A stretch of DNA of 64,000 nt. It comes from Scyliorhinus canicula. Taxonomy: Eukaryota. A model generated the notes under the pieces. The model was given only the letters and a program-made list of their open reading frames with translations, did not search any database and was not told where the DNA came from. Of the stretch, positions 1,481-63,054 are shown piece after piece. The translations under genes were made by a program, and so were the position numbers. The DNA is taken from assembly GCF_902713615.1 (NCBI RefSeq), contig NC_052164.1, positions 40,349,091 through 40,413,090 on the forward strand. The letters are read 5' to 3'. Each line of letters opens with the position of its first letter. Position 1 is the stretch's first letter.

Positions 1481-1553
1481 CAGATACACACAGACACACA
1501 TAGAGACAGAGACACACAGATTGACACTGAGAGACAGAGACACACAGAGTGAC

Positions 1554-1968: not shown

Positions 1969-4900
1969 ATGTCTCTGGCCAGTATTTGGAGGTTTGGGAC
2001 GGTGTTGTTCCTCTTGTCCGGGACCCTCAGTCTGGGCTGTGAGAGGCTGCAGTTACAGCAAGTTCTCAACACAGAGACACTCAGCAAACTGAATGAAATG
2101 GTGAGTTGAAGCTGGAGCCAGAAACAATTCCCCATCGCACTGGGTCCATTTGTTTTGAAGCATTCTCTCAGGAAAATGGTTTTGGGGTTTGCAGCGCTGC
2201 ACAATTTATGACGTGGAGATGCCGGCGTTGGACTGGGGTGAGCACAGTAAGAAGTCTTACAACACCAGGTTAAAGTCCAACAGGTTTGTTTCAAACACGA
2301 GCTTTCGGAGCACGGCTCCTTCTTCAGGTGAATGGAAAGGCTTGTTCCAGAAATGTTTATATAGACACAGTCAGAGATGCCCCGGAATGCGAGCACCTGC
2401 AGGCAATCAAATCATCAAAGATGCAGAGAGAGAGGTAACTCCAGGTTAAAGAGGTGTGAATTGTCCCAAGCCAATTGTCCCAAGCCAAGCCAATGTGTCT
2501 ATATAAACATTTCTGGAACAAGCCTTTCCATTCACCTGAAGAAGGAGCCGTGCTCCGAAAGCTCGTGTTTGAAACAAACCTGTTGGACTTTAACCTGGTG
2601 TTGTAAGACTTCTTACTGTGCACAATTTATGGTCAGCGAATCTGCAGCATTACTGTTTCTGATCTGGGTTGACACAGTGTTTGTCTTTGCTCTCAGGGCG
2701 GTCGCTTCCCTCGGCAATGTGTCAGGGAGAGGTTTGCGCTGACAACAAAGCCCTTGAATCTGGTGAAACTGTCTGAGGGTTTGCAGGTGAGTGAACACTG
2801 GGGCTTATTATCGTTTATTCCATCAGAAATGTGCGAAAAACACGATAAAGATCAACCACCGTAATCCAGGATGGACAGAGCAGGTCGCTCATTGAAGTTG
2901 TCAGTGGAAATGAGGGAGATCCTGCTTTGAACTCAAACCCCCGGGTAAAGACTCTCTTCCTCGTTCCCTCAGACTGATGTAGGGAATGGAACCTCATTGA
3001 GCTGTGATGCACCCTGTTGGGGGAGCCTGCCAAGTCTGCAGCACCATTCAAAGGTTACTTGTGCCTGCTAATCATCTCAATTCCTTTCATCACCTCACTA
3101 CCCATTAGCATCTCTGTCTTCTCCCTCTTACTCCCTCACTGTCTATCCACTTCTTACCATCAATCGTCCTATACAGTTCAGGCAGGGCCCTTTCATCTGT
3201 GGATTCCACACAACATACCTGTCCACTCTCCATTGCATTCACTCGATGGTCACTGTGTTGATATTGGTGGGATGGTTAGCTCATTGGCTAGTCCAGGATG
3301 CTGCCACCAGCGCTGGTCCAATTCCTGTCTGACTGAGGAAGTGTGAGACCTGCCTCTGCGCCCTTCCCTGAGAGTCGAAGACAATGACAGACTCCCTCTA
3401 CAAATAAACAAAATCAAACTGCCCAGAAAGCAACTCAGGGTGAAGCATCAGATGCCACAGCGTCAGAGGCCCAGGGTGACCGTGAGGAGTTTTCACGTTC
3501 GCTGCGTGTGCGTGGGATTCCTCCGGGTGCTCTGGTTTCCTCTCACAGTCCAAAGATGTGCAGATGAGGTGGATTGGCCATGATAAATTGTCCCTTAGTG
3601 CCCAAGGGTTTGGTGGGGTTATGGGGATGTGGCAGCGGAGTGGAAGGGGAGCTCCATTATTCTAATACTGTCCAGGGTGGCCTCTCAATTTATGTCCTCT
3701 ATAAACTGGAACACAATCCAATAACTATTGTAATATAACATAACTCAATTATCTCTGGTGCAGCACGGTGGCACAGTGGTTACCATTGCTGCCTCAGGGT
3801 GCCGAGGTCCCAGGCTTGATCCCGGCTCTGGGTCATTGTCAGTGTGGAGTTTGCGCATTCTTTCCATGTTTGCGTGGATTTCGCTCCCACAATCCAAAGA
3901 TGTGCAGGGTAGGTGATCTGCCGTGCTAAATTGCCACTTAATTCGAAAAAATGAATTGAGTACTCTAAATTTATTTTTTTTAAACTCATCATCTCTAAAT
4001 ATTCCAACAACACAAACTCCCAGTCAGCCATCACCTCTGCATTCTCAGATTAGATTCATTCAGATATCACCAAGTTCACAACTTTGCAAAATGGATTTTT
4101 CCGATATTCCCCGTGGTGCCACCAAAATATCGAATGGAGAGAGTTCTTTCACTCACAGGGTCCGAGGAAGGAGATATTAATGGATAGGTCTTGTCAGGAG
4201 ATTTTGTGTCAGTGGAGGGGGTTAAGTCTATGTACGAGGAGAAGTTGGGGCCCATATTGAATGACGAGGTGTGAGGCACTTCGCAGGGTGAACTCCACAT
4301 CCACCTGGGCCAGGTTTGGTTTCATCCAGCCTCGGGTAGTTTTGAGGGCGCATTTGACCAATTTCAGAATGAGTCACTTCTTTTTAGGGGGGGGGGGGGG
4401 GGGGACGACAGGTTTACAGTGCTGTTTACATGGTCCGGGTAACAACGTGCATATGTTCTGGTTTTGTCCCGAAGTCATGGGTTTTGGGGTCTCCTTCTTT
4501 AGCACCATGTTGGCGATCCTGAAGATTGAGCTGGAGCCCTAACCTTTAGCGGCCATACTTTGGGTGTCAGACTTATCAGAGCTGCAAACGGGCGCAGGGG
4601 CCAATGGCGTCGCCTTCTCCTTGCTCCTTGCTCGGAGGTGAGTTCTGCTGGGATGGAGTTCTCCGCCTCCATCCAGTGCCTCGGTTTGGCTTGGGGACCT
4701 GATTGAGTTCCTATTCCTTGAAAAAGTCAAAGAAAAGTTGAGGGGAGCAATCGACTGGATTCTATGGGAGATGAAGCCTTTTACTGTCTTTTTCAAGGAA
4801 ATTGTCACCTTTTGTTACTGGGGGTGGGGGGGGGGGGGGGGGAGTTGACGGGAGGGGAGTGGCAGGTTTCATGAGAGGTTGTTTTATGTTTCTGTTTTTC

Positions 4901-5476
4901 ATGTCTGTAGATGTGTTTATTTTTCTTGTTATTTTGAATTTCATAAATGAATTATATTAATGAAAATATTTATTAAAAAAACAAAAATGCATCATCTTTA
5001 ATCTGATTGTGTATATATTCCCTAGACACAGGACAGGATGCAGATTGTCCATCAGACCCTGCGTCATATCAGCAAGATCTACAGCATGAACCTGGGTTCA
5101 GTCACCTGGGACCGGAACAAGGTGGAAAACCTCCGCCTTCTCCTGGACCGACAGCTCAGTGAGCTGGAAGAATGTGTCAGGAAACAGGGCTCAGAGGCCA
5201 GACTGAGGAAAAACTCCACCATTCAAAAATACTTCAGGAAACTGAGGAAGTTTCTCAAACAGAAGGTGGGACAATTGATAATTGAATGTGTGATTATTGG
5301 ATTGTAGTTTATTTGACCGTATTTAGATCTGTTCATTTTCCAATTAGGTTTCCTTAAAATATATTCTGTTTTTCCAGACATTCAGCAACTGTGCTTGGGA
5401 AATAATCCGCGCTGAGACCAGGGCCCGTTTACAACAGCTCCTTTACTTAATGGCACAAGTCCGCAGAAGAAATTGA
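1969..5476 (+). CDS. Type I interferon, subtype A copy 1 (4 exons, 186 aa, 4 Cys)
   Basis: Exons 1969-2100, 2697-2786, 5026-5265, 5378-5476; all introns GT..AG, phase 0. Translation: MSLASIWRFGTVLFLLSGTLSLGCERLQLQQVLNTETLSKLNEM/GGRFPRQCVRERFALTTKPLNLVKLSEGLQ/TQDRMQIVHQTLRHISKIYS...WD...LEECVR...YFRKLRKFLKQK/TFSNCAWEIIRAETRARLQQLLYLMAQVRRRN*. The signal peptide, FP..C, YF..L..FL and CAWE motifs are type I IFN hallmarks; an ATTTA-rich 3' UTR follows. Confidence 0.95.
2296..2330 (-). ncRNA. Minimal hammerhead motif, mirror copy
   Basis: Exact reverse complement of 2533-2567. Confidence 0.7.
2533..2567 (+). ncRNA. Minimal type I hammerhead ribozyme motif (Penelope-type)
   Basis: CAC-CTGAAGA-A-GGAGC-CGT-GCTCC-GAA-AGCT-C-GTG: stem I, CUGANGA core, 5-bp stem II, GAAA, palindromic AGCU helix III, CUC cleavage triplet. 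Confidence 0.75.
3762..3980 (+). mobile_element. HE1-like V-SINE (intron 2 of A; another partial copy at ~3455-3640)
   Basis: GCAGCACGGTGGCACAGTGGTTA head plus V-domain. Confidence 0.75.
4085..4988 (+). mobile_element. L1 3' fragment in intron 2 of gene A (duplicate ~27400-28303)
   Basis: RVNSTSTWARFGFIQ..HMFWFCP remnant, G-run 3' UTR, A-rich tail. Confidence 0.8.
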
Positions 5477-14544: not shown

Positions 14545-14965
14545 GTGATGAGAAGCTTCACAACACTGAGCTGGAAGCCAGCGCTGCTTGGGATTTTCTC
14601 GCAGGGATTTCCCACTCACTGCTTCCGGAGTCTCCAGCTTTCAGCTTCCTGACCTCAAAGAGAAACCGCACAAACTATTGATCTCCTGCAGCTCGAACAC
14701 AAATCCTCCAGCCCATTTTCACTTTTCCAATGTCATGTCCACACCTTAAAGGCGTCAGCATGTCAGAGCCAGTGCCAGCTCCCAGCAGAGTCCACACTCA
14801 CACTCACTCCATTCGCCAACAGAGGCGTTCGCTCCCGGATCACAATCGGCTCCCATTCGACTTTCCCACTTTCATTCGCTTCACAAGAACCTTTCTCGCC
14901 GCTGAACCACGAAGCCGCCGCTTTCTCATCTTTTACATCGGTGTGTGACTCTGGCTCGGTTGCTC
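14545..14965 (+). promoter_or_regulatory. Proximal promoter/5' leader of gene B
   Basis: GGGATTTCCC (14604), AGCTTTCAGCTTCC, TTTTCACTTTTCC (~14716), TTAAA (14746), TTTCCCACTTTCA (14862). Confidence 0.7.
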
Positions 14966-17098
14966 ATGGCTCTGGCGAGTATTTGGAGGTTTGTGACGGT
15001 GTTGTTCCTCTTGTCCGGGACCCTCAGTCTGGGCTGTGAGAGGCTGCAGTTACAGCAAGTTCTGAACACAGAGACACTCAGCAAACTGAATGAAATGGTG
15101 AGTTGAAGCTGGTTTCTGAGCAGCCTGTGAATCACATTGGGTCTAATTGCTGTGAAATGTTATTTCTGAAGAAATAGTTTGGGGTTTTTAATGAGATTTT
15201 ATTTTACTCCTCTCAGGGTGGTTCCTTTCCCAGACACTGTATAAAACACAGGCACGCGCTGAAAACCAAGCCCTTGAACCTGGTGAAACTTTCGAAGGGA
15301 TTAGAGGTGAGTGTGACAATGGTAGCAGCTTCTGTCGTTACATTTCACTCTGTAGTTAGAGCAACAACCTGATCGGAACCGGGAACATCAGGAATTTTCA
15401 ATTGAGAGATTTGTACCCATTGTGATAATGATAGCTGCTTCTGTCGTTATATTTCATTCTGTATCTCACCCATGAACTGTGTCACTCTCTCTTCCCGCAT
15501 TCACTATCTCACTATCTCTAACCCCTGAAAATATGCCCGTCTCTCATCAACTCTTCATTGCAAATTACTTTCTTGTTGCAACTATCGGATTGCTTGAACT
15601 ATCTTAATCTCCCAATGTCACTGTTTCTGAGCCTGTCATTCCTCTGATCAACAATTTCCTCCCGCAAAATATAATTATACTTAAAATCTGTGGACATATA
15701 TTCCAGAGTATTTCCACTTCAGATTGACATTAAGTGCAATCTTACGTGTACAATGCAATTATAATATTCCTAATGTTAACGAAGCACATCTCGTGTCAGA
15801 TATATAGCTTCAGTACAAAACCATTCATGATTATTGCTGATAGATAAGATAGACAAGGAAAAACTTCCCATTAGTTCATGGTACAAGGTCCAGGAGACAC
15901 AGATTTAATATCCACTTAAGGACATCATCCCCAAAGCCACTTTTACCAAATCAGTTGGAGTCAGGGAATTCAGAAATTGGACATCCACAAAACAATCTTG
16001 TCAGGTTTGTTTCCTGGTTGTTATTATTCGCGCGCGATCTCTGACGTTTCTTGCAGTCTTGGGCCGAGCAGTTACCATACCAGGCTGTGATGCAGCCAGA
16101 TATGATGCTTTCTATGGTGCACCTGTAAAAGTTGGTAAGTCATTGTGGACATTCCGAATTTAGGTTCCTGAGGAAGTATAGGCTTCTGTGGGAGGGTTAA
16201 AGTGGGTGGACCAGGACAGATTTTTGGTGATGTGCACACCTAGGAATTTGAAGCTGTCAACCATCTCCACCTCAGGTCCGTTGATGCAAACAGGGGTCTG
16301 TATAAGACTTTGCTTCCTAAAGTCAATGACCGGCTCTTTTATTTTGCTGGCATTGCGGCAGAGATTGTTGTTGTTACAGAACTCCACTGGATTCTCTATC
16401 TCCCTTCTGTATTCTGACTCACTGTTGTTCCAGATCCGACCCACTGTAGTCGTGTCGTCAGCAACACTGTAGATGGCGGTGGAGCCGCATTTTGCCACAA
16501 TCCTATGTGTATAGGGAATATAGTAGGGGGCAAAGTACGGAGTATTGCGTATTTGAGCATTTTAAGTTTGATTTATTTTTGTTCTTCGAAATAATTTATT
16601 CGAATGCTAAAGGTAACAGGTCTCTCTAATATCGTTTTGTATTCTGTACAGAAAGAGGATCAGATCCAGATTCTCCATCAGACCCTGCGTCACATCAGCA
16701 AGATCTACAGCATGAACCTGGGCTCAGTCACCTGGGACCGGGACACGGTGGAAAACCTCCGCCTTCTCCTGGACCGACAGCTCAGTGAGCTGGAAGAATG
16801 TGTCAGGAATCAGGGATCAGAGCACAAGATGAGGAGAAACTCCACCATTCATAATTACTTTAGGAAACTGGAGAAGTTTCTCAATCAGGAGGTGGGACAA
16901 TTGATAATTGACTGTGTGATTACTGGCTGGTCGATCATTTCACCCGATCAACATTAATTTATTTTCTAATACACTTTCCTGAATAATTTTCTTTTTCAGA
17001 AATTCAGTGACTGTGCCTGGGAAATAATCCGCACTGACACCAGGGCCCGATTACAACAGATGCTTTTCATAATGCTGCAAATCAGCAGAAGAAACTGA
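14966..17098 (+). CDS. Type I interferon, subtype B copy 1 (4 exons, 186 aa)
   Basis: Exons 14966-15097, 15217-15306 (GGSFPRHCIKHRHALKTKPLNLVKLSKGLE), 16652-16891 (KEDQIQILHQTLRH...FRKLEKFLNQE), 17000-17098 (KFSDCAWEIIRTDTRARLQQMLFIMLQISRRN*). Canonical splice sites, open frame. Confidence 0.95.
16040..16550 (-). mobile_element. Rex1/Babar-like RT fragment in intron 2 of gene B (duplicate ~39180-40050)
   Basis: VADDTTTVGRI..ESEYRREIE..C..NNL..N.SK.KE.VIDFRK..VEMVDSFKFLGVHI..NLSWSTH. Confidence 0.8.
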
Positions 17099-19594: not shown

Positions 19595-21139
19595 AGAATA
19601 AGAAAGTGAAAGATGAAGGCATTAATTCAGAAGGGACAGAGAGAAATGGGATTGAGTTTGGAGATGTTGCAGTGTTGAGGTGACAATTTTGCGATCTAAT
19701 GATGCAGAAGTTCAGGCTTATGCTCAGAGGATGTTGGTGAAAATTACACAATTTGATGGGATTTGAATTTAGTTAATCAATCGCAGTAATAGTAAGCACG
19801 ATATTGTACGAAACACTTTCCTGATGCACTCATGTCTGTTCGGGAAGGAAATTGATGCCCCATCCCCGCTCTGGCCTACATGTGGCTACAACAATGTGAT
19901 TGCCTCTTCACAGCCCTCTGATGTGGCCTAGGAGCCATGAACCTCAAGGGCAATTAGGCATGGGCAACAAATGCTGGCCTGACTGGTGATATGGAATTGA
20001 TATGATAGAATTTTGAATACTGACTGTATGACATCAGAACACAAGGAGGAGCAGACCAATTCTGTTCCACCATTCAATTTTGTCTTAAGTGATCTGATTG
20101 TGGCCTTATCCCATTTCCTACTTACCCCCATCACTTTTACTCATTTGTTGATCAGACAACTGTCCAAATCGGGCTTGGATGTATTCAATGATCCTGCCTC
20201 TGTGCAGGTTGCAGAATTTGAAAGATTAATGGCACTTGGAGCAATCAGAGTTTACAATCAGATCGGAGAGGATGTTATCGAATGGTGGGATAGGATGCTG
20301 AGGGCGGGTGGCCTATGATGTTCCTAATTTATATGTTGGGGTGTTTTTCTGTTCATGATCACAACACTGGTTGTTGATAAGTGAAGCACAAATTGGCTAA
20401 TGTGTTTCCTATATTACGACAGTCACAATGCCTCAAATGTACTACATCAGCTGTCGAGTACTTTGTGATGTTCTGTTGTCAGGAAGGGCGCTACATAAAT
20501 GTAATTCTGTTTTCAAATCAAACTCATATTGAAAACTGTCCCCACACAAAAAACCCACCTCAGCTCAGGATCAATGGATCATCGCTGAAATTGTTTACAG
20601 GCCTTCGATAGGCTCCAAAAGCTAGTTTTGACAATTTGGGTCTGAGGACAGTTTTAGTTTCTGAAATTAACTTTTGAATTTGAAAACGGAAAGACAATTA
20701 CACCCCAGTGTCACCAGACATTGAGCCTGTATTATTTTCAGTAATGTTGAATCAGGTTTCCAACAGAGGTAAAATCGATACTGGCATTAAAATGCTTCTG
20801 CGTTTAAATAAAATTGCACGTGGCAACAATCTTAAATATATGCATCAATATTCTCAGATATTTTCAAAAATTCAATGTTGATGTGCAGTCTGATTTTGCT
20901 GGTTCATGGCAGATGTGACGTTTGGTGATTGACAATGAATTGGAGTGGAAAATCTTTCAGAGGGTCGGTGCAGATTGGATGGGCTGAATGGCTGCCTTCT
21001 GCACTGTAGGGATTGTATGATTTTATGAATTAGAGATGAGAAACACACAGTGGCCTTGCCAGCGAACCTCAAATCCCATCAATGAGTAAAATAAGTCAAA
21101 TTTGGCACAGATTTCAGTGAGTGGACCTGAGATTTTTAT

Positions 21140-22528
21140 TTGGTGACGGTGGACATGCTGATTTCTATCCGAGTTCCAGCTGTGAGGGATTGGGTGACAT
21201 TCCCTGTGGAAGCAGGGATATCCCGAATATCCGGAACCCTTTCCCATTTCCCCCTCAGGCCTTTCAGTGACGAGCCGCTCGCTTCACAAACTCTCCTCCC
21301 TCTCGGAAATGACAAAACGCCCTCACTTTCCCTGAGGCACTTTCGCTTTTGGAACAAACTGACAACAAGGTTCATTTACAGAGAGAAAGTGAGGCGGCCG
21401 CTTTCCCGGGAGACAGAGAGAGAAGAAAGAAACGGGGTGAAAGGAGAGGGAGCGGATTCACTTTCACCCTCGGAATCGGAGCAGATGAAATATTCTTTCA
21501 GTCAAACTCTTGAAAACGGCTCCAGAAAAGCAGCGGGAAATGAGCAAGTTGTGCCAGTGAAAGAGCAGATTGTGGGACAGCTCAATGGGAGCGGAGTCAG
21601 TGTCCATGAAGCGGGGAGCCTGGGCTCTGAGCTGGGCTCTCTGCAATGTTCAAGCTGTGAAGTGTGGAGAGGACAAGCGCGATGTGAACACACCGGGTCC
21701 CGGTGCATTTCAGAGGCAATGGGGCCCCGGGTCAGGTCGGAAAGCCGCCGCACCGGATTCCCGCTCTCGGTGTCTCTATAATCCGGATGATCAAATCCAG
21801 ACCCCAATACATGTTCCCCCTGCAACCCCAGCCCCCCCCCCCCAATACTGAGCCTCCCTCTACTCCCCCTTACTGCCCCCCCCCAATACAGAGCCTCCCT
21901 CTACACCACCTTACTGCCCACAATACTGAGCCTCCCTCTACACCATCTTACTGCCCCCCCCACCAATACTGAGCCTCCCTCTACACCTTACTGCCTCCCC
22001 CCCAATACTGAGCCTCCCCCTACACCACCTTTCTGCCGCAAATACTGAGCCTCCCTCTACACCCCCTTACTGCCCCCCCAAAACAGAGCCTCCCTCTACA
22101 CCACCTTACTGCCCCCTGGTGATGTGAAGCTTCACAACACTGAGCTGGAAGCCAGCGCTGTTTAGGATTTTCTCGCAGGGATTTCCCTCTCGCTGCTTCC
22201 GGAGTCTCCAGTTTTCAGGTTCCTGACCTAAGAGAGAATCCGCACAAACTATTGATCTCCTGCAGCTCGAGCACAAATCCTCCAACCCATTTTCACTTTT
22301 CCAATGTCATGTCCACACGTTAAAGGAGACACCAGTGCCAGCTCCCAGCAGAGTCCACACTCACACTCATTCCATTCGGCAACACAGGCGCTCGCTCCCG
22401 GATCACAAGCGGCTCCCATTCGACTTTCCCACTTTCATTCGCTTCACAAGAACCCTTCTCGCCGCTGAACCACGAAGCCGCCGCTTTCTCATCTTTCACA
22501 TCGGTGTGTGACTCTGGCTCGGTTGCTC
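21140..22528 (+). promoter_or_regulatory. Enhancer + minisatellite + promoter of stand-alone exon 1 (copy 1)
   Basis: Paralogue of 13490-14965 with the motifs retained. Confidence 0.6.
21843..22116. repeat. Promoter minisatellite, 7 units
   Basis: Same unit. Confidence 0.95.
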
Positions 22529-22660
22529 ATGGCTCTGGCGAGTATTTGGAGGTTTGGGACGGTGTTGCTCCTCTTGTCCGGGACCCTCAGTCTGGGCTGT
22601 GAGAGGCTGCAGTTACAGCAAGTTCTCAACACAGAGACACTCAGCAAACTGAATGAAATG
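22529..22660 (+). CDS. Stand-alone IFN exon 1 (signal peptide + helix A), candidate alternative first exon of gene A'
   Basis: ATG..GAAATG, 44 open codons, intact GTGAGT donor, preceded by a full B-type enhancer/promoter. No exon 2-4 homologue is visible before the A' promoter (~25000). Confidence 0.75.
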
Positions 22661-23572
22661 GTGAGTTGAACCTACAGCCAGAGCCGGATTCGAATCAAAC
22701 AGCGTCTGTATGTTTTACAAAGTCATATCAGGAGAGGAAGAAAAATGTGTGAAAAAACACATCAGGTCTGAGCGGTGAATAGAAGTTGGACACTGAGGCG
22801 AGGAGAATTTACAGAAAGGAGGGATTGTTATCTGGGGGCGGGGGTGAAAGAGGATTCAGAAACAAGCCATTCACATCAATAATCTGTGTTTAATGTAACC
22901 AAACAATCACAGTGTTATCAGGAACACAGTAAAGTAAATTTGACATCAAGTTACGTAAGAAGGTAAAAGAACAGATGGCTAAAAGCTGGTAAAAGAGGGA
23001 ACTTTTCAGGAAGGTCTTGCCGTAGGAAGGGGAGGTGGAGAAATGCGGAAGTTTACGGAGGGAATTCCTAATCTTAACGCTGAGATAGCTGAAGACTGCG
23101 CCTCAAAAATGAACATTGGAAACCAGGACGCCAGATCTGGAGGTGGACAGATATGTCAGAGTGTTTTCGAGGCTGGAGATGATTACAGACACAACAGAAG
23201 ACTTAAAAACAAGTAGGAGAATTTAAAGATGAAGGCATTGCTTAACTCGGCGTCAATATAAATCAGCAAACTCAGGTACAATGAGAGAACAAGATTCATG
23301 ATTTATGCCAAATCCATCTCAGACATAAATTACTACAGGTTTCGATTGGGGAGAAAGTGGAAAGTCGATCAGGCAGGTGTAGGAGTGACCAAACGAGGAG
23401 GTAACAAAGCTATGGATGGAAATTTCAGCTTCAGAGTTGCTCAGCCAGAGAGGGGGACAAGTGTGATTGGGGGGGGGGGGGGGGGGGAGTGGGCAGTCTT
23501 ACTTGTGGCGTCGATGTGGTCAGAAACTCATTTCAGGGTCAAATATCACACCTGCACATCTTGGGACTGTGA

Positions 23573-23719
23573 TGTGGAGATTTCGGCGTTGGACTGGGGT
23601 GAGCACAGTAAGAAGTCTTACAACACCAGGTTAAAGTCCAACAGGTTTGTTTCAAACACGAGCTTTCGGAGCGCAGCTCCTTCTTCAGGTGACCTAGTGT
23701 TGTAAGACGTCTTACTGTG
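23573..23719. mobile_element. Penelope-like cassette inserted in a SINE
   Basis: Flanked by CATCTTGGGACTGTGA repeats; has a short inverted tail. Confidence 0.75.
23657..23691 (-). ncRNA. Minimal hammerhead motif
   Basis: Minus strand reads CAC-CTGAAGA-A-GGAGC-TGC-GCTCC-GAA-AGCT-C-GTG; only the stem II loop differs. Confidence 0.7.
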
Positions 23720-24995
23720 CATCTTGGGACTGTGAGAGGAAACCGGAGCACCGGGAGGAAACCCAAGCAGACACGGGGAGAACGTGCAGACTCCGCACAA
23801 TCACCAGAGGCTGGAATTGAACCTGGGTGTGAGGCAGCAGTGTTAATTACTGTGCCAGGTGCTGCCTCTATGATCTGCTGGTAACTTTCACCTCACTTTT
23901 CCTCTCTGTCCAAAGTAGCACAGTGGTGCAAAGATCAGCACTGCTGCCTCAGGGCACCGAGGACCCGGGTTCGATACCGGCTCTGGGTCACTGTCTGTGT
24001 GGAGTTTGCATATTCTCCCCGTGTCTGCATGGGTCTCATCTCCACAACCAAAAGATGTGCTGGTTAGTTGGATTGGTCACACTAAATTGCCCCTTAATTG
24101 GAAAAAAGTAATTGGTACTCTATAGTTCTAAAAAAAACTTTTCCTGTCTGTCCCTCTCCCCCGGGACACACTTGTAGATTCCCCTTGAATATCTGCAATG
24201 ACCGAGGGGTTGCTTTACTGAGGAAGCGAATTCGAAAGACTAATGAGCCACTGAGACAAACAAATTCCTCCTTACTTCCATCATAAATGGGAGAGTCTTA
24301 ATTTTTAAACTGTGCACCTTAGTTCTAGAATCCTCTGGAAGAGGGTGCCCTCCTGTCAGCTTGTATCCAGCCAACCCCCCTCAGATTCTGAGACGTTTCA
24401 ATATTCGAATTAGTTTGATCAGCACACCGGGTGTTTTGAGATGATGTCATTGAGAGGTAGCATGCAGCTGAGAAATGGGAGAGGTCAAGGATTGATTCTT
24501 AGGGGACACCAGAGGTAATGCAGCCGTCCTTCAGCAGGAAGAGAAGCCACTGCAGGAAATTCTCTGCCTACGTTGAGATAGATGATAAAAGCAAACGAGG
24601 ACAGCCCCCTTCCAGCCCCATCCACCCAGCCTAAAACTTGACCATTGTGCAGAGGCCTGACCGACCCGTGTCAAGGTGCAGACATGATATGGAGATGCTG
24701 GCGTTGGACTGGGCTGAGCACAGTGAAAAGTCTCAACTGAGGAAGGAGCAGTGCTCCGAAAACTAGTGTTTGAAGCAAACATGTTGGACTTTATCCTGGT
24801 GTTGTAAGACTTCTTAAGGTGCAGACATATAGAGAAGGATCTGAAGGGGAGGTTAACCTTTGTTACAGCCAAACCGTTCTAACCAACTGCCCCCTTATTG
24901 TGCCCTTGATGTGAATCCGTTCAACTTGAAGGAAATCATCTGCTTTTCCAAAATTGATATTAATAATATTGATCCATATTCTTGGAGCTTTGAGT

Positions 24996-25219
24996 TAGAA
25001 CCGGGCGCTGTTTGTGTTTTTGTATTTGGAATCTTCCCGGCCCTGGTTGAGGAATTTCCAGCTTTCAGATTCCTTCCCTCACACAGGGAGCAGACTAACT
25101 ATTCTCCTTGTAAAAGAAACAACCGAAAGCAGATTTCACTTTCCCAACGTAACACCGCTGATCGCCAGACTCTCCTCTTAACACGGAGAGCATGGCAGAG
25201 AGAGATCCTCCCAACACAG
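24996..25219 (+). promoter_or_regulatory. Putative core promoter of IFN gene A'
   Basis: Duplicate of 1255-1480 with the same kB/IRF motifs. Confidence 0.6.
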
Positions 25220-25550
25220 NNNNNNNNNNNNNNNNNNNNNNNNNNNNNNNNNNNNNNNNNNNNNNNNNNNNNNNNNNNNNNNNNNNNNNNNNNNNNNNNN
25301 NNNNNNNNNNNNNNNNNNNNNNNNNNNNNNNNNNNNNNNNNNNNNNNNNNNNNNNNNNNNNNNNNNNNNNNNNNNNNNNNNNNNNNNNNNNNNNNNNNNN
25401 NNNNNNNNNNNNNNNNNNNNNNNNNNNNNNNNNNNNNNNNNNNNNNNNNNNNNNNNNNNNNNNNNNNNNNNNNNNNNNNNNNNNNNNNNNNNNNNNNNNN
25501 NNNNNNNNNNNNNNNNNNNNNNNNNNNNNNNNNNNNNNNNNNNNNNNNNN
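25220..25550. other. Assembly gap at the paralogous position
   Basis: N run. Confidence 0.95.
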
Positions 25551-25710
25551 AGACGCGCAGGAGAGTTTAGGCGGTTGCTCCTGCTGCAAGCGGTTGCATT
25601 TTCACTCCCGGTGATTCTTTCGGTGAAAATACAACAATTGTTCGGAGTTGAACCCGGTTACGGTCAGTGTGTGATCCTCAGCTCCGTATCTCACTCTGGC
25701 TCGGTTGCTC

Positions 25711-28700
25711 ATGGCTCTGGCCAGTATTTGGAGGTTTGTGACGGTGTTGTTCCTCTTGTCCGGGACCCTCAGTCTGGGCTGTGAAAGGCTGCAGTTACAG
25801 CAAGTTCTCAACACAGAGACACTCAGCAAACTGAATGAAATGGTGAGTTGAAGCTGGAGCCAAGAAACAATTCCCCATCGCACTGGGTCCATTTGTTTTG
25901 AAGCATTCTCTCAGGAAAATGGTTTTGGGGGTTGCAGCGCTGCACAGTTTATGGTCAGCGAATCTGCAGCATTACTGTTTCTGATCTGGGTTGACACAGT
26001 GTTTGTCTTTGCTCTCAGGGCGGTCGCTTCCCTCGGCAATGTGTCAGGGTGAGGTTTGCGCTGACAACCAAGACCTTGAATCTGGTGAAACTGTCTGAGG
26101 GTTTGCAGGTGAGTGAACACTGGGGCTTATTATCATTTATTCCATCAGAAATGTGCGAAAAACACGATAAAGATCAACCACCAGGATGGACAGAGCAGGT
26201 CGTTCATTGAAGTTGTCAGTGGAAATGCGGGAGCTCCTGCTTTGAACTCAACCCCCCGGGTAAAGACTCTCTTCCTCGTTCCCTCAGACTGATGTAGGGA
26301 ATGGAACCGCATTGAGCTGTGATGCACCCTGTTGGGGGAGCCTGCCAAGTCTGCAGCATCATTCAAAGGTTACTTGTGCCTGCTAATCATCTCAATTCCT
26401 TTCATCACCTCACTACCCATTAGCATCTCTGTCTTCTCCCTCTTACTCCCTCACTGTCTATCCACTTCTTACCATCAATCGTCCTATACAGTTCAGGCAG
26501 GGCCCTTTCATCTGTGGATTCCACACAACATACCTGTCCACTCTCCATTGCATTCACTCGATGGTCACTGTGTTGATATTGGTGGGATGGTTAGCTCATT
26601 GGCTAGTCCAGGATGCTGCCACCAGCGCTGGTCCAATTCCTGTCTGACTGAGGAGGTGTGAGACCTGCCTCTGCGCCCTTCCCTGAGAGTCGAAGACAAT
26701 GACAGACTCCCTCTACAAATAAACAAAAACAAACTGCCCAGAAAGCAACTCAGGGTGAAGCATCAGATGCCACAGCGCCAGAGGCCCAGGGTGACCGTGT
26801 GGAGTTTTCACGTTCGCTCCGTGTGCGTGGGATTCCTCCGGGTGCTCTGGTTTCCTCTCACAGTCCAAAGATGTGCAGGTGAGGTGGATTGGCCATGATA
26901 AATTGTCCCTTAGTGCCCAAAGGTTTGGTGGGGTTATGGGGATGTGGCAGCGGAGTGGAAGGGGAGCTCCATTATTCTAATACTGTCCAGGGTGTTCTCT
27001 CAATTTATGTCCTCTATAAACTGGAACAGAATCCAATAACTACTGTAATATAACATAACTCAATTATCTCTGGTGCAGCACGGTGGCACAGTGGTTAGCA
27101 TTGCTGCCTCAGGGTGCCGAGGTCCCAGGCTTGATCCCGGCTCTGGGTCATTGTCAGTGTGGAGTTTGCGCATTCTTTCCATGTTTGCGTGGATTTCGCT
27201 CCCACAATCCAAAGATGTGCAGGGTAGGTGATTTGCCGTGCTAAATTGCCACTTAATTCGAAAAAATGAATTGAGTACTCTAAATTTATTTTTTTAAAAC
27301 TCATCATCTCTAAATATTCCAACAACACAAACTCCCAGTCAGCCATCACCTCTGCATTCTCAGATTAGATTCATTCAGATATCACCAAGTTCACAACTTT
27401 GCAAAATTGATTTTTCCGATATTCCCCGAGGTGCCACCAAAATCTCGAATGGAGAGAGTTATTTCACTCACAGGGTCCGAGGAAGGAGATATTGATGGAT
27501 GGGTCTTGTCAGGAGATTTGGTGTCAGTGGAGGGGGTTAAGTCGATGTGCGAGGAGGAGTTGGGGCCCATATTGAATGACGAGGTGTGAGGCACTTCGCA
27601 GGGTGAACTCCACATCCACCTGGGCCAGGTTTGGTTTGATACAGCCTCGGGTAGTTTTGAGGGCGCATTTGACCAATTTCAGAATGAGTCACTTCTTTTT
27701 AGTGGGGGGGGGGGGGGGGGGGGGGACGACAGGTTTACAGTGCTGTTTACATGGTCCGGGTAACAACGTGCATATGTTCTGGTTTTGTCCCGAGGTCATG
27801 GGTTTTGGGGTCTCCTTCTTTAGCACCATGTTGGCGATCCTGAAGATTGAGCTGGAGCCCTAACCTTTAGCGGCCATACTTTGGGTGTCAGACTTATCAG
27901 AGCTGCAAACGGGCGCAGGGGCCAATGGCGTCGCCTTCTCCTTGCTCATTGCTCGGAAGTGAGTTCTGCTGGGATGGAGTTCTCCGCCTCCATCCAGTGC
28001 CTCGGTTTGGCTTGGGGACCTGATTGAGTTCCTATTCCTTGAAAAAGTCAAAGAAAAGTTGAGGGGAGCAATCGACGGGATTCTATGGGGGATGAAGCCT
28101 TTTACTGTCTTTTTCAAGGAAATTGTCACCTTTTGTTACTCGGGATGGGGGGGGGGGGAGTTGACGGGAGGGGAGTGGCAGGTTTCATGAGAGGTTGTTT
28201 TATGTTTCTGTTTTTCATATCTGTAGATGTGTTTATTTTTCTTGTTATTTTGAATTTCATAAATGAAATATATTAATGAAAATATTTATTAAAAAAACAA
28301 AAATGCATCATCTTTAATCTGATTGTGTATATATTCCCCAGACACAGGACAGGATCCAGATTGTCCATCAGACCCTGCGTCACATCAGCAAGATCTACAG
28401 CATGAACCTGGGTTCAGTCACCTGGGACCGGAACAAGGTGGAAAACCTCCGCCTTCTCCTAGACCGACAGCTCAGTGAGCTGGAAGAATGTGCCAGGAAA
28501 CAGGGCTCAGAGGCCAGACTGAGGAAAAACTCCACCATTCAAAAATACTTCAGGAAACTGAGGAAGTTTCTCAAACAGAAGGTGGGACAATTGATAATTG
28601 ACTCTGTGATTATTGGATTGTAGTTTATTTGACCGTATTAGATCTGTTCATTTTCCAATTGGGTTTCCTTAAAATATATTCTGTTTTTCCAGACATTCAG

Positions 28701-28773
28701 CAACTGTGCTTGGGAAATAATCCGCGCTGAGACCAGGGCCCGTTTACAACAGCTCCTTTACTTAATGGCATAA
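25711..28773 (+). CDS. Type I interferon, subtype A copy 2 (4 exons, 180 aa; C-terminus shortened by CAA>TAA)
   Basis: Exons 25711-25842, 26019-26108, 28342-28581, 28693-28773. The TAA at 28771-28773 lies 6 codons before the paralogous TGA. Confidence 0.92.
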
Positions 28774-31700
28774 GTCCGCAGAAGAAATTGAAATAAAATC
28801 CAACCGCATGTTCAGCAGAGACTGGAATAATTTATTTAAATTGACTGTTATTTATAGAATAACAGAATTCTGTGGTGACTGACAAAGAGCAAAGAATATC
28901 TTGATGTAATTTTCTATTTGATTATTTATTCTAATTTATTAATATTTATCGCTGCAATATTTTTATGTTGTGAAATCTTCATCATATGTGTGCTAAGCTA
29001 AATGGATGGCCATGATGTCTTTGTACAACAGATGTTAGATTTTTACGGTTGTGAACTCACAAATGTAAAGAAGGTATTTCGATGACACATTTCAGACAGA
29101 CTGAAACAAGAAATAGTTCTTTCAAAGCTTCACGTTTTTGAGAAGTATTATATTTTATGTCTACAGTACGTCTGGAATTTCAATTCTGACAGCTTGGCTC
29201 GATGATAACACTGATTGGTGGGTCAAACCCCACTTAATTCTCACTGGGCTCCTTATTGTAGCTGCTGAAACTCCAATCACAATTCTGCACTGGGAATGGT
29301 CCAGCCAATCCTCAGCTCTGCTTTCCCGGTTTCCTCAGTCTCAAGGGTCGGTTGCAGACAAACGACCCCTGACCTCATTCCTGTTTCAGACTCACCTTTA
29401 CTTTCTGTTCACCACAAGGTCAACATTTCAATTAATTCCTCCTCATTTTAATTTATTGATATTTATCATTGTGTTGGCTTTGTGTCATGGAATGCTTAAG
29501 TTTTGTACAATTTATGAAAAATAAATGTTAATTTATTGATTTTTATTAAATTTTGGTTAATAAATATATATTTTTCATAAACCTGGCAACGTTTTATACT
29601 GAATGAAAGCATATTTGTTCAAATAAATTGTTTTTGATATCACGCATTTGCTGGAGTAATATTTATTTTTCATGGGTCTTCTCAGGGTTTTCCTCAGTCT
29701 CAAGGGTGGGTTGCAGACAAACGACCCCTGACCCCATTCCTGTTTCAGATTCACCTTTACTTTCTGTTCACCACAAGGTCAACATTTCAATTAATTCCTC
29801 CTTTTCATAGAATTTACAATGGAGAAGGAGGCCATTCAGCCCATCGAGTCTGCACCGGCTCTTGGAAAGAGCACCCTACCCAAGGTCAACAACTCCACCC
29901 TATCCCCATAACCCAGTAACCCCACCCAACACTAAGGGCAATTTTTGGACACTAAGGACAATTTATCATGGCTAATCCACCTAACCTGCACATCTTTGGA
30001 CTGTGGGAGGAACCCGGAGCACCCGGAGGAAACCCACGCACACACGGGGAGGATGTGCAGACTCCGCACAGACAGTGACCCAAGCCGGAATCGAACCTGG
30101 GTCCCTGGAGCGGTGAAGCGATTGTGCTATCCACAATCCTCATTTTAATTTATTGATATTTATCATTGTGTTGGCTTTGTGTCATGGATTGCTAAAGTTT
30201 TGTACAATTTATGAAAAATAAATGTAAATTTATTGATTTTTATTAAATTTTGGGAAATAAGTAATTTTTTTTATAAATCTGGCAACTTTTTATACTGAAT
30301 GAAAGGATATTTGTTCAAATAAATTGTTTTTGATATCACGCATTTTCTGGAGTAATATTTATTTTTCATGGGTCTTCTTCACTATAAATGTGTTATAATT
30401 GAACAAGTTAGCATTAGGATGGAAGAGGTATTAATTATTTTAGTGCACTTAAGAGTGGTGATTATCTGCTTTCACTGCTATCAAAGGAAGGAGAGGGCCT
30501 TGGAGTAGGTGAATATTGACTAGGATGGGCACACGGTGTGGATATATCAGAACATTAGGATTGAGCTGGCGCAGAGCTGTGCGGACTTCAACAAGGTGAA
30601 GGTGATGCAATTTGCCATAGTTTACCCGGTGTGATTGTGGGTCACAATGGACTCGAAAGATTATTTTTTCAACATGCTGGAGCTGGCAGAGGCCTTCACC
30701 AGAGAGAAGAAGCTGGGGCTGGTCTGAGGAGCATCATTTGGGATTCTGCGTTTGAAGGTGGGACGATTTTATAGTGTATTTGTGCCTCATTTTAGTATAT
30801 TTCTTTCTCTTGGGGTTGGGGCTGTAAGAACGTGGGATTGACACATTTCTTGGCTCAGAGACAAGCTTGCTAATAATGTTGGGATTTGGGTTTCGGGAGT
30901 GCATCAGAAGGGAGTGGGTGGTTGTTGCTTTTAGGGATGTAATGCAGGGTGATGCTGGGAGGGGGTCACCTTGCTAGCGGAAGGAGACGGTGTGGCTAGT
31001 GAATGAGAGAGGAGTGGAGGAAGAGGCTGTTGGGCTAGATCATGTGAGGCACAATCGATCGAGCTGTTTTACTGTTTGTTTGGTAGGGGCATGGGGCCCG
31101 GTATGGTGTTCCTACAAGAAACTCACCTGTGGGTGCCGGACCATCCAGGTTGGGGAAGCCCTGGGTGAGCCAGGTTTTCCACTCAGGGTTTGACAGATGG
31201 GTCGGGGGGGAGTGGATTTCGGTCAGCAAAATGATTCGCTTTCAGTCGGGAATTCTGGCTGATCAGGGGATGGTTATGTGATGGTTACAGGTATGCTGGG
31301 GGGGCGGTTTCGCCATGGGCAGGTTTAGCTCACCAGGCTAAATCGCTGGCTTATAAAGCAGACCAAGCAGGCCAGCACTGTTCGATTCCCATACCAGCCT
31401 CCCTGGACAGGCGCTGGAATGTGGCGACTGGGGGCTTTTCACAGTAACTTCATTGAAGCCTACTCGTGGCAATAGGTGATTTTCATTTCATTTCATGGTG
31501 TGAGTGAATGTGTATGCCCCAAATTGGAGCAATGTCAAGTCTATGGGGTGCTTGCTGGCTGCAATACCGGAGATGGACACCCACCAATTGATTTTAGGGG
31601 CGAGATTTTAATTTCGTCTTAGATCCGAAGCTGGACTGTTCCCGATTGAGGTCACTAACCCAATCAGGAATTACAAGGGTGTTGGCTGCATTCATGGAGG

Positions 31701-59560: not shown

Positions 59561-60039
59561 ATACCAAGGTGCTACTGAAGGAGGCTCGGCGAGAAACTGC
59601 AGTGCATCTAATGGATGGTTCGCATTGCTGCCACTGTGCACCAGTGTGGAGGGAGTGAATGTTTAAGGTTAGTGGACAGGGTGCCAATCAAGCGAGCTGA
59701 TTTGCCCAGCGTGGTGTGGGATGCTTCAGTGTTGTTGGTAGCCGCACTCATCCAGGCAAGTGGAGAGTATTCCACCATCATTCCTGCACCTTGTAGTTAG
59801 GAGACAGACGTTGGGGAGACATGAGGTGAGTCATTCGTTGCAGAATTCCCAGCTTCTGCCCTGCTCTTGTAGCCACAGTGTTTATAATGATGGTCTAGTT
59901 CTGTTTCTGGTCTGTGGTGCAACATTTTTGAATTCAACACACTAACATTCCTAATCTCAATGCTAGATTGTCATCTGCAAAATAAATGCGATGTAAAAAA
60001 TGAAAAAATGTGGCAGAGATATCAGTGAGTGGAGAATAT

Positions 60040-61860
60040 TATTTGGTGACGGTGGACATGCTGATTTCTGTCCGAGTTCCAGCTGAGAGGGATTGGGTGG
60101 CATTCCCTGTGGAAGCTGGGATATCCCGAATATCCGGAACCCTTTCCCGCCCCTCCCCCAAGCCTCTCAATGACGAGCCGCTCGCTTCACAAACTCTCCT
60201 CCCTCTCGGAAATGACAAAACGCCCTCACTTTCCCTGAGGCACTTTCGCTTTTCGAACAAACTGACAACAAGGTTAATTTCCAGAGAGAAACTGAGGCGG
60301 CCGCTTTCCCGGGAGAAAGAGAGAGAGACAAGAAAGAAACGGGGTGAAAGGAGAGAGAGCGGAATCACTTTCACCCTCGGAATCGGAGCAGATGAAATAT
60401 TCTTTCAGTCAAACTCATGAAAACGGCTCCAGAAAAGCAGCGGGAAATGAGCAAGTTGTGCCAGTGAAAGAGCAGATTGTGGGACAGCTCAATGGGAGCG
60501 GAGTCAGTGTCCATGAAGCGGGGAGCCTGGGCTCTGAGCCGGGCTCTCTGCAATGTTCAAGCTGTGAAGTGTGGAGAGGACAAGCGCGATGTGAACACAC
60601 CGGGTCCCGGTGCATTTCAGAGGCAATGGGGCCCCGGGTCAGCTCGGAAAGCCGCCCGGATTCCCGCTCTCGGTGTCTCTATAATCCGGATGATCAAATG
60701 CAGCCCCCAATACATGATCCCCCTGCACTCCCCCCCCCCAATACTGAGCCTCCCTCTACACCAGCTTACTGCTCCCCAATACTGAGCCTCCCTCTACAAC
60801 GCCTTACTGCTCCCCCCAATCCTGAGCCTCCCTCTACACCACCTTACTGCCCCCCCCCCCAACACGAAGCCTCCCTCTACACCACCTTACTGCTCCCCAA
60901 TACTGAGCCTCCCCCTATACCTCCTTACTGCCCCCCAATACTGAGCCTCCTCTACACCACCTTACTGCCCCCAATACTGAGGCTCCCTCCACACCACCTT
61001 ACTGCCCCCCCAATACTGAGCCTCCCTCTACACCACCTTACTGCCCCCCAATACTGAGCCTCCCTCTACACCACCTTACTGCCCCCCAATACTGAGCCTC
61101 CCTCTACACCACCTTACTGCCCCCAATACTGAGCCTCCCTCTACACCACCTTACTGCCCCCCAATACTGAGCCTCCCTCTACACCACCTTACTGCCCCCA
61201 ATACTGAGCCACCCTCTACACCACCTTACTGCCCCCCCCCCAATATTGAGCCTCCCTCTACACCACCTTACTGCCCCACCCCAATACTGAGCCTCCCTCT
61301 ACATCACCTAACTGCCCCCCCAATACTATGCCTCCCTGTACGCCACCTTACTGACCCCCCCCCCCCCCAATACTGAGCCTCCCTCTACACCACCTTTCTG
61401 CCCCCAATACTGAGCCTCCCTCTAATCCACCTTACTGCCCCCCGGGTGATGTGAAGCTTCACAACACTGAGCTCGAAGCCAGCGCTGCTTGGGATTTGCT
61501 CCCAGGGATTTCCCACTCGCTGCTTCCGGAATCTCCAGCTTTCAGCTTCCGACCTCAGAGAGAAACCGCACAAACTATTGATCTCCTGCAGCTCCAGCAC
61601 AGATCATCCAGCCCATTTTCACTTTTCCAATGTCATGTCCACACATTAAAGGCGACAGCATGGCAGAGCCAGTGCCAGCTCCCAGCAGAGTCCACACTCA
61701 CACTCACTCCATTCCCCAGGCGTTCGCTCCCGGATCACAAGCGGCTCCCATTCGAATTTCCAACTTTCATTTGCTTCACAAGAACCCTTCTCGCCGCTGA
61801 ACCACAAAGCCGCCGCTTTCTCATCTTTCACATCGTTGTGTGACTCTGGCTCGGTTGCTC
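60040..61860 (+). promoter_or_regulatory. Enhancer + minisatellite + promoter of stand-alone exon 1 (copy 2)
   Basis: Paralogue of 21140-22528. Confidence 0.6.
60739..61443. repeat. Promoter minisatellite, 18 units
   Basis: Same unit; central copies nearly identical. Confidence 0.95.
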
Positions 61861-61992
61861 ATGGCTCTGGCGAGTATTTGGAGGTTTGGGACGGTGTTGT
61901 TCCTCTTGTCCGGGACCCTCAGTCTGGGCTGTGACAGGCTGCAGTTACAGCAAGTTCTCAACACAGAGACACTCAGCAAACTGAATGAAATG
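61861..61992 (+). CDS. Stand-alone IFN exon 1, second copy
   Basis: 44 open codons and a GTGAGT donor. Downstream 62000-64000 parallels 22670-24510. Any partner exons would lie beyond the window end. Confidence 0.75.
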
Positions 61993-63054
61993 GTGAGTTG
62001 AACCTACAGCCAGAGCCGGATTCGAATCAAACAGCGTCTGTGTGTTTTACAAAGTCAGGAGAGGGAGAGAAAACAATCCTCTGGGGGAGATAGAATCTAA
62101 ATGTGTGAAAAAACACATCAGGTCTGACGGGTGAATGGAAATTGGACACTGAGGCGAAGAGGATGGACAGAAAGGACGGATTGTGATCTGGGGACGGGAG
62201 TGAAAGAGGATTCAGAAACAAGCCATTAACATCAATAATCTGTGTTTAATGTAATCAAACAATCACAGTGTTATCAGGAACACAGTAAAGTAAATTTGAC
62301 ATCAAGTTACGTAAGAAGGTAAAAGAAGAGATGGCTAAAAGCTGGTTAAAGAGGGAACTTTTCAGGAAGGTCTTACCGTAGGAAGGGGAGCTGGAGAAAT
62401 GCGGAGGTTTACTGAGGGAATTCCTGATCTTAATGCTGAGATAGCTGAAGACTGCGCCTCAAAAATGAACATTGGAAACCAGGAGGCCAGATCTGGAGGT
62501 GGACAGATATGTCAGAGTGTTTTCGAGGCTGGAGATGATTACAGACACAACGGAAGATTTAAAATCAAGTAGGAGAATTTAAAGATGAAGGCATTGCTTA
62601 ACTCGGCGTCAATATAAATCAGCAAACTCAGGTACGATGAGAGAACAAGATTTAGGATTTATGACAAATCCATCTCAGACTTAAATTACTTCAGGTTTAG
62701 GTTGGGGAGAATGTGGAAAGTCGATCAGGCAGGTGTAGGAGTGACCAAACCCGGAGGTAAAAGTGGATGAACATTTCAGCTTCAGAGCTGCTCAGCCAGA
62801 GAGGGGGACAAGTATGTTTGGGGGGATGGGAGTGGGCAGTCTTACTTGTGGGGCGGAATGGTCAGAAACTTATTTCAGGGTCAAAGATGACACCAAACCC
62901 AGGCAGTTTCCAGGGAGAGGGTTGGTGTCAGTGACTGGCAAAGATACATTGTATCGGGGACCATAGACAATCGTATCAGTGGTCTTAGAAGAACATGAGG
63001 AGCAGGAGCAGCCCATTCGGCCCATAGAACCCGCTGTGGCATTCAGTAAAATCC

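What the first reader, a model, noticed from the sequence alone, without database searches (positions are those of the whole stretch)
21140..28773. Candidate dual-promoter interferon gene with two complete signal-peptide first exons
Seen: a full B-type enhancer, minisatellite, promoter and exon 1 (22529-22660, open, GTGAGT donor, phase 0) sits ~3 kb upstream of gene A', which has its own divergent promoter and exon 1 (25711). No exons 2-4 lie between them. The N-gap is unlikely to hide them, because the A' promoter is already left of the gap. The same module recurs intact at 61861 with homologous downstream sequence. Inference: the upstream exon could splice in frame to A' exon 2 (26019), so almost the same secreted protein would be made from two differently wired promoters. 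Known teleost IFN alternative 5' exons (zebrafish ifnphi1, salmonid IFNa) mainly change signal-peptide use; a duplicated whole coding first exon would be a different design.
Basis: partly seen in the sequence, partly recalled or inferred. Interest (0 to 1): 0.8.

Follow-up and report, generated by a model that had tools for sequence, protein, structure and literature searches.

The report
Spare interferon first exon upstream of gene
In the small-spotted catshark interferon cluster, an intact extra promoter plus signal-peptide exon sits 3 kb in front of a complete interferon gene and could serve as a second start for it. Whether it is ever used could not be tested, and gene conversion alone can explain why it looks so well preserved.

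Summary
Window 22529-22660 is an intact 44-codon interferon first exon with a GTGAGT donor. It sits behind a B-type enhancer, a 38-bp minisatellite and a promoter, 3.05 kb upstream of exon 1 of the complete gene A' (25711). No exons 2-4 lie between them. The module recurs at 61861.

The window is Scyliorhinus canicula: A', B and B' equal RefSeq proteins exactly.

The assembly gap (25220-25550) lies in A' promoter or 5'UTR sequence, not in coding sequence. Its two flanks line up in the same order with one B/O-type promoter.

Homology of the orphan to B genes stops 13 bp into intron 1, so it is a partial gene copy that is carried in the repeated O-A-B unit. Exon 1 evolves in concert in all six copies: A-type versus B-type identity is 97-99%, against 82-84% for exons 2-4. 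Its intactness is therefore not evidence of use.

Splicing 22660^26019 is in frame and would give the same mature protein. RefSeq already joins such a distal exon to A-type exon 2 in sister units, including gene A of this window. A' itself is annotated from its proximal exon.

Use remains about even odds. First readers also noted this arrangement in two neighbouring windows of this genome.

The parts
21026..21836 (+). B-type distal enhancer block of the orphan module O1, with NF-kB palindrome GGGATATCCC at 21215-21224
   Evidence: It is 90-94% identical to the upstream regions of B, B' and pseudogene C, and 95.5% identical to O2. Motif scan.
21485..21595 (+). 37-codon ORF with a GTCAGT donor inside the enhancer. 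Its counterpart in another unit serves as first coding exon of RefSeq XP_038634690.1, a model with no signal peptide.
   Evidence: I think this is probably an annotation artefact; not tested.
21837..22116 (+). Minisatellite, 37-38 bp unit, 7.1 copies
22117..22528 (+). O1 proximal promoter and 5'UTR (B-type), with NF-kB site GGGATTTCCC at 22178-22187 and an IRF-type element (TTTTCACTTTTCC) at 22290-22302
   Evidence: Both sites are kept at the same offsets in O2, B and B'.
22529..22660 (+). Orphan exon 1 (O1): 44 codons covering the signal peptide and the start of the mature chain, phase 0, followed by GTGAGT
   Evidence: It matches each of the other five exon 1 copies at 128-130 of 132 bases.
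22661..26018 (+). Candidate distal intron (length uncertain because of the gap). It contains an O-specific stretch to about 23552, transposable-element copies, the A' promoter, the gap and A' exon 1.
   Evidence: Homology to the B genes ends at 22673. There are no exon 2-4 remnants and no AATAAA/ATTAAA on the + strand.
24991..25219 (+). Left half of the A' proximal promoter, with NF-kB-like GGAATCTTCC at 25028 and IRF element TTTCACTTTC at 25134
25220..25550 (.). Assembly gap inside the A' promoter or 5'UTR. Length and content unknown; not filled.
   Evidence: The paralogous gap at 1554-1811 has the same right edge.
25551..25710 (+). Right half of the A' promoter or 5'UTR
   Evidence: Aligns to O1 22386-22548 at 66% identity.
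25711..25842 (+). A' proximal exon 1
   Evidence: The RefSeq CDS of XP_038634703.1 starts here.
26019..26108 (+). A' exon 2, the shared acceptor for both first exons
28342..28581 (+). A' exon 3
28693..28773 (+). A' exon 4, ending in a TAA stop that comes six codons earlier than in gene A
60006..62894 (+). Second orphan module O2, with exon 1 at 61861-61992. It is followed from 63216 by A-type upstream sequence that runs off the window.

Best explanation
**Origin.** O1 is the 5' end of a B-type interferon gene: enhancer, minisatellite, promoter, 5'UTR and exon 1 with its donor. A partial duplication or deletion with a breakpoint within 13 bp of the start of intron 1 separated it from the rest of that gene. 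It now belongs to the repeated O-A-B unit of the catshark type I interferon cluster.

**Preservation.** Gene conversion keeps a roughly 160-bp island, from 18 bp before the ATG to 10 bp into the intron, nearly identical in all first exons. This includes the orphans.

**Likely action.** O1 keeps a promoter as well preserved as those of working B genes and a consensus donor. The next well-defined acceptor downstream is A' exon 2. O1 is therefore positioned to act as a distal alternative first exon of A'. Transcripts started there would splice 22660^26019 and yield the same mature interferon with a signal peptide differing at two residues, under B-type control.

**Shown and inferred.** Shown: the anatomy, frame compatibility, concerted evolution, and public gene models that use this join in sister units. 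Inferred: that the promoter fires and that the splice happens.
For: - Anatomy and open joined frame.
- Homology to B ends at 22673, and no downstream exons follow.
- The NF-kB and IRF sites sit at the same offsets in O1, O2, B and B'. O1's enhancer is as close to those of B, B' and C (90-94%) as those are to each other.
- No canonical poly(A) signal lies on the + strand in 22661-26018. About 2.3 would be expected by chance, so this is weak evidence.
- RefSeq XP_038634701.1 is gene A of this window. Its CDS spans 6,725 bp, starts 1,248 bp before the window, carries an exon 1 peptide identical to O1's, and skips A's own exon 1 at 1969.
- XP_038634692.1 does the same in another unit, with a 6,179-bp span.
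- Three S. torazame A-type genes span 6.14 kb, a length that fits a distal first exon.
- No homologue of the B-type enhancer block or minisatellite was detected upstream of A'.
Against:
- The RefSeq model of A' itself uses the proximal exon. So do XP_038634697 and XP_038634699, and partly XP_038634694.
- The mixed choice, together with a model that starts in an enhancer ORF, suggests to me a predictor choosing between equivalent exons rather than RNA support.
- O1 and O2 are 95-98% identical over exon and flanks alike, so the exon shows no conservation beyond its surroundings.
- Gene spans in other species are ambiguous without their DNA.
Confidence: 0.5

Rival explanations
1. O1 is a silent relic. 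It is a truncated B-type gene fragment copied along with the O-A-B unit. It looks intact only because the copies are young and gene conversion keeps overwriting exon 1. It makes no productive mRNA, and the RefSeq models that use distal exons are prediction artefacts.
For: - Exon 1 is 97-99% identical between A-type and B-type genes, against 82-84% for exons 2-4 (Fisher p from 2e-5 to 8e-9).
- Variant bases are shared in a mosaic pattern across gene types.
- O1 and O2 are 95-98% identical in the exon and in the flanking intron alike.
- The cluster holds another broken gene, C, which lacks its promoter, exon 1 and exon 2.
- RefSeq's choice of first exon is inconsistent among near-identical units.
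- Runs that hold the A' 3' end were not listed as holding at least 5% of the O1 5' region words.
Against: - The promoter motifs are intact.
- The donor is a consensus one.
- No poly(A) signal lies before A' exon 2.
- By general knowledge of alternative first exons, an active promoter with a strong donor upstream of a gene usually splices into that gene's exon 2.
Confidence: 0.38
2. The O module works mainly as an upstream enhancer for the A' proximal promoter, which shows no detectable B-type enhancer block of its own. Its exon 1 is a passenger.
For: No homologue of the 21026-21836 enhancer was detected anywhere in 22661-25219. The nearest copy is O1's, 4.5 kb upstream of the A' ATG. The NF-kB palindromes are conserved.
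Against: Not tested. It is not exclusive of either reading above.
Confidence: 0.07
3. Assembly artefact: units that are 97-98% identical were collapsed or wrongly joined at the gap, so O1 and A' are not really neighbours.
For: Gaps sit in front of both A and A' at the same point. The units are near-identical.
Against: - O1 and the left half of the A' promoter lie on one uninterrupted stretch (1812-25219).
- O2 and its A-type upstream sequence also lie on one stretch.
- The gap flanks follow one promoter in order.
- Three units show the same order of parts.
Confidence: 0.05

Closest known systems
Teleost group I interferon genes with two transcription starts (zebrafish ifnphi1, Atlantic salmon IFNa, rainbow trout IFN1)
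   Same: One interferon gene gives transcripts from two start regions that are regulated differently (review PMC5127012; PMC3828176).
   Different: In teleosts the alternative 5' end removes the signal peptide and gives an intracellular interferon. Here both first exons encode a complete, near-identical signal peptide, the second start is a duplicated whole promoter plus exon from a paralogue, and its use is unproven.
Alternative first exons with their own promoters spliced to shared downstream exons (general design, as in UGT1A and clustered protocadherins; from my own knowledge)
   Same: Each first exon has its own promoter and donor and no acceptor, and each joins one common acceptor.
   Different: In those clusters the first exons encode different protein parts. 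Here the two give the same mature protein, so only regulation could differ.
Truncated 5' gene fragments in tandem multigene families, homogenised by gene conversion
   Same: O1 lacks the downstream exons, is carried in the duplication unit, and shares a sharply bounded identity island with its paralogues.
   Different: O1 has no disabling change and lies in the right orientation and phase to feed a complete gene.
Shark type I interferons (PF00143; RefSeq 'interferon alpha-F-like' of S. canicula; Redmond et al. 2019, PMC6640115)
   Same: A', B and B' are exact RefSeq proteins of this family.
   Different: The paper reports only a partial B-type catshark sequence and says nothing about orphan first exons.

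Membership tests
Type I interferon gene (Pfam PF00143) | The product matches the interferon alpha/beta domain | tested here: met
   The database records PF00143 for the RefSeq proteins that are identical to A', B and B'.
Type I interferon gene (Pfam PF00143) | A complete open reading frame with signal peptide across all exons | tested here: met
   A, A', B and B' are all open at 180-186 aa, with four coding exons in phase 0. The signal-peptide cleavage site was inferred by eye and not computed.
Dual-start interferon gene of the teleost kind | Two transcription start regions used in vivo | not testable with these tools
Dual-start interferon gene of the teleost kind | The alternative 5' end changes signal-peptide presence (secreted versus intracellular form) | tested here: not met
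   Both first exons encode a full signal peptide. The joined products differ at residues 10 and 14 only.
Alternative first exon of a downstream gene | Own promoter, an intact donor, no acceptor, and phase compatible with the shared acceptor | tested here: met
Alternative first exon of a downstream gene | Junction observed in RNA | not testable with these tools
   Only RefSeq predicted models in sister units show the join.
Truncated gene relic (pseudogene fragment) | Lacks the remaining exons of its parent gene | tested here: met
   Homology to B ends at 22673.
Truncated gene relic (pseudogene fragment) | Carries disabling changes (stop, frameshift, lost splice site or lost promoter motifs) | tested here: not met
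   The ORF, the donor and the NF-kB and IRF sites are intact in both O1 and O2.
Gene-conversion island | Identity far above that of the neighbouring gene parts, with sharp edges and mosaic sharing of variants among paralogues | tested here: met
   The island runs from 18 bp before the ATG to 10 bp after the donor.

The most novel reading that the evidence does not exclude
Every A-type interferon gene of catsharks, and perhaps of carcharhiniform sharks in general, is a true two-promoter gene. A B-type virus-responsive module with its own signal-peptide exon was grafted upstream, and selection keeps it so that one mature cytokine can be switched on through two different regulatory circuits.
Probability: 0.2. 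Interest if true: 0.6.

Novelty: new variant of a known kind. Interest (0 to 1): 0.42.

Why it matters
If the distal exon is used, it shows a simple evolutionary route to rewiring a cytokine. A paralogue's whole promoter and first exon are copied in front of a gene, so the same secreted protein answers to two control regions. That differs from the teleost dual-start interferons, which switch between secreted and intracellular forms.

It also matters for practice. Public gene models of this cluster disagree on which first exon belongs to which gene. In addition, the last 57 nt of exon 1 are identical in all copies, so short junction reads cannot tell the two starts apart.

If the exon is not used, this is an ordinary gene fragment in a fast-duplicating immune cluster and a clear example of exon-limited concerted evolution.

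Tried and rejected
- **RNA reads.** No read evidence exists.
- **Run searches.** Both sequencing-run searches listed no holder that is on record as RNA. X1-X5 hold part of the A' 3' end. Only X25 holds 6% of the O1 region.
- **Transcript-derived protein fragments.** A search with the first 74 residues found nothing.
- **DNA of other sharks.** Every look-up of encoding contigs returned gene ranges but no DNA because the files are too large. I could not check whether S. torazame or Mustelus keep a proximal exon 1. Their long gene spans may simply reflect longer introns.
- **Redmond et al. 2019 supplements.** They hold only one partial B-type catshark sequence with a retained intron 1.
- **Rfam.** The search of 21000-29000 gave no match at gathering score.
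- **O1 intron homology.** The weak collinear similarity of the first 75 bp of O1's intron to A and B intron 1 (about 63%, E 0.002-0.04) rests largely on the shared first 10-13 bases. I do not count it as homology.
- **Hidden exons in the gap.** I rejected the idea that the gap hides exons 2-4 of O1. Both gap flanks belong to one promoter in order, and the interval is only 20-79 bp in B and O.
Full report
**What the window is.** The 64-kb window holds a tandem cluster of type I interferon genes. Each gene has four coding exons of 132, 90, 240 and 81-99 nt, all in phase 0.
- Gene A: 1969-5476.
- Gene B: 14966-17098.
- Gene A': 25711-28773.
- Gene B': 37877-40610.

All four are open. The products of A', B and B' are identical to the Scyliorhinus canicula RefSeq proteins XP_038634703.1, XP_038634700.1/702.1 and XP_038634705.1. 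The window is therefore small-spotted catshark, assembly GCA_902713615.2.

On the minus strand lies a fifth gene, C. It keeps the B-type enhancer (51832-50768) and exons 3-4 (47908-47465) but has lost its promoter, exon 1 and exon 2.

**The observation.** It is correct in every coordinate.
- O1 (22529-22660) is a complete 44-codon first exon followed by GTGAGT.
- Its upstream 1.5 kb is 88-93% identical to the upstream regions of B and B'.
- That region includes a 38-bp minisatellite of 7.1 copies, NF-kB palindromes at 21215 and 22178, and an IRF-type element at 22290. The 22178 NF-kB site and the IRF-type element sit at the same offsets as in B and B'.
- Homology to the B genes stops at 22673, 13 bp after the exon.
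- Three kinds of search found no remnant of exons 2-4 before A'.
- A second module, O2 (exon 61861-61992), has the same downstream sequence and is followed by A-type upstream sequence up to the window end.
- A third copy lies before the window. The RefSeq CDS of gene A (XP_038634701.1) spans 6,725 bp and starts 1,248 bp before position 1, with an exon 1 peptide identical to O1's.

**The gap.** The run of N at 25220-25550 lies 161 bp upstream of the A' start codon, so no reading frame crosses it.
- The left flank aligns to O1 22141-22307 and the right flank to O1 22386-22548, in order, at 62-66% identity.
- The same interval is 20 bp in B and 79 bp in O1.
- Gene A has a gap at the homologous place with the same right edge (1812 matches 25551). 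The 75 extra bases read on its left side are CACAGAGA-like low complexity.
- The simplest reading is an unassembled simple repeat inside the A-type promoter or 5'UTR. Its real length and content are unknown, and I did not try to recover them.
- O1 and the left half of the A' promoter lie on one uninterrupted stretch, so their linkage does not depend on the gap.

**What O1 is by origin.** It is the 5' end of a B-type gene, cut just inside intron 1 and carried in a repeating O-A-B unit.
- Units A-B and A'-B' are 93-98% identical.
- O1 and O2 are 95.5% identical in the enhancer and 95-98% from 22406 to about 23400. The A-type upstream sequence that follows is only about 78-83% identical between the two units. 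The module has therefore been homogenised or copied more recently than its surroundings.

**Concerted evolution of exon 1.** Between A-type and B-type genes, exon 1 is 97-99% identical while exons 2-4 are 82-84% (Fisher p from 2e-5 to 8e-9).
- The identity island runs from 18 bp before the ATG to 10 bp into the intron in all six copies.
- The few variable bases are shared in a mosaic across gene types. For example, B' carries the A-type bases just before the ATG and at codon 4, while B carries the O-type bases.
- This is the signature of gene conversion.
- The exon 1 peptide is also strongly conserved among distant sharks, so protein-level selection on the working copies adds to the effect.
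- Because the orphans take part in this exchange, their intact state does not show that they are used.

**Could O1 serve A'?** Structurally, yes.
- Donor and acceptor are both phase 0, and the joined frame is open.
- The product differs from A' only at V10G and F14L in the signal peptide. By my reading of the cleavage site after residue 23, the mature protein would be the same.
- No AATAAA or ATTAAA lies on the + strand between the donor and exon 2. About 2.3 are expected by chance, so this is weak support.
- A' exon 1 has no acceptor, so it would be spliced out with the intron.
- The two promoters are homologous but far apart (about 65% identity). A' has only a degenerate NF-kB-like site, and no counterpart of the B-type enhancer block or minisatellite was detected upstream of it.

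**Public gene models.** Among the seven A-type RefSeq models of S. canicula:

| Choice of first coding exon | Models | CDS span |
|---|---|---|
| Distal O-type exon | XP_038634701, XP_038634692 | 6.7 and 6.2 kb |
| ORF inside the enhancer, no signal peptide | XP_038634690 | 7.5 kb |
| Proximal exon, full length | XP_038634697, XP_038634699, XP_038634703 | about 3.07 kb |
| Proximal exon, last codon only | XP_038634694 | 2.9 kb |

- The counterpart of the enhancer ORF in this window is at 21485-21595.
- The model of A' itself is proximal (XP_038634703).
- I cannot see the evidence behind these models. The mixed choice among near-identical units, and the odd enhancer ORF, make me suspect arbitrary choice by the predictor.
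- A-type genes span 6.14 kb in S. torazame (three genes), 9.3 kb in Mustelus asterias and 1.25 kb in Chiloscyllium punctatum. No DNA could be fetched, so long introns and distal exons cannot be told apart.

**RNA.** I obtained none.
- Neither run search listed a holder that is on record as RNA.
- A search for transcript-derived N-terminal fragments was empty.

**Verdict.** The anatomy is real, and the proposed splice is possible and plausible. Use is unproven.
- About 0.5: the distal exon is used at least in part of the induced transcripts.
- About 0.38: it is a silent relic kept tidy by gene conversion.
- The remainder is split between an enhancer-only role and an assembly error.

Compared with the teleost dual-start interferons (PMC5127012, PMC3828176), this would be a different design, because both starts encode a full signal peptide. 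I found no paper describing it. First readers of this scan noted the same arrangement in two neighbouring windows of this genome. Those notes are unchecked.

Noticed in passing
window 47465-51832, minus strand: B-type interferon pseudogene C. It keeps the enhancer and exons 3-4, but the stretch homologous to B 14580-15468 (promoter, exon 1, intron 1, exon 2) is deleted at about 50730. RefSeq nevertheless annotates it as a 128-aa protein, XP_038634436.1.
   Followed up: partly
window 42367-46740 versus 59030-53836: A large inverted repeat, about 77% identical, flanks pseudogene C. This stretch between B' and O2 has no counterpart between B and O1.
   Followed up: no
window 1969-2100 and the sequence before position 1: RefSeq XP_038634701.1 builds gene A from a distal exon 1 that lies 1,248 bp before the window, and skips A's own intact exon 1 (which begins MSLASIW) at 1969. 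The protein from A's own exon 1 is not in the annotation.
   Followed up: yes
window 21485-21595; also 60392 (+) and 51202 (-): A 37-codon ORF with a GTCAGT donor lies inside the B-type enhancer. It is open in O1, O2 and C and frameshifted in B'. RefSeq XP_038634690.1 uses its counterpart as first coding exon of an A-type gene, giving a product with no signal peptide.
   Followed up: partly
window 1479-1553 and gaps 1554-1811, 25220-25550: Both A-type promoters are broken by an assembly gap at the same point, next to CACAGAGA-like low complexity. This suggests a long simple repeat between the core promoter and the ATG of every A-type gene.
   Followed up: partly
window 28771-28773 versus 5456-5476: A' ends at a TAA where A reads on for six more codons (QVRRRN). 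A' therefore encodes 180 aa against 186 in the other genes.
   Followed up: no
window 2209-2331 and 2532-2624; 23570-23692; 24684-24823: Copies of a short palindromic mobile cassette, 89-97% identical, lie in A intron 1 and twice between O1 and A'. The copy in A lengthens its intron 1 from 176 to 596 bp. Rfam gave no match at gathering score in 21000-29000.
   Followed up: partly
all four genes, e.g. 25711-28773: These shark interferon genes have three introns in the coding region. Fish and amphibian type I interferon genes are described as having four (PMC6640115). The 240-nt exon 3 may correspond to two fused exons.
   Followed up: no
proteins P0079, P0083, P0066 (rays): In rays, an IFN predicted from public sequencing-run (Logan) assemblies, with 17 cluster members and a longest contig of 902 bp, and a Mobula RefSeq isoform X1 both replace the signal-peptide exon with another N-terminus in front of exon 2. 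This resembles the teleost intracellular interferons.
   Followed up: no
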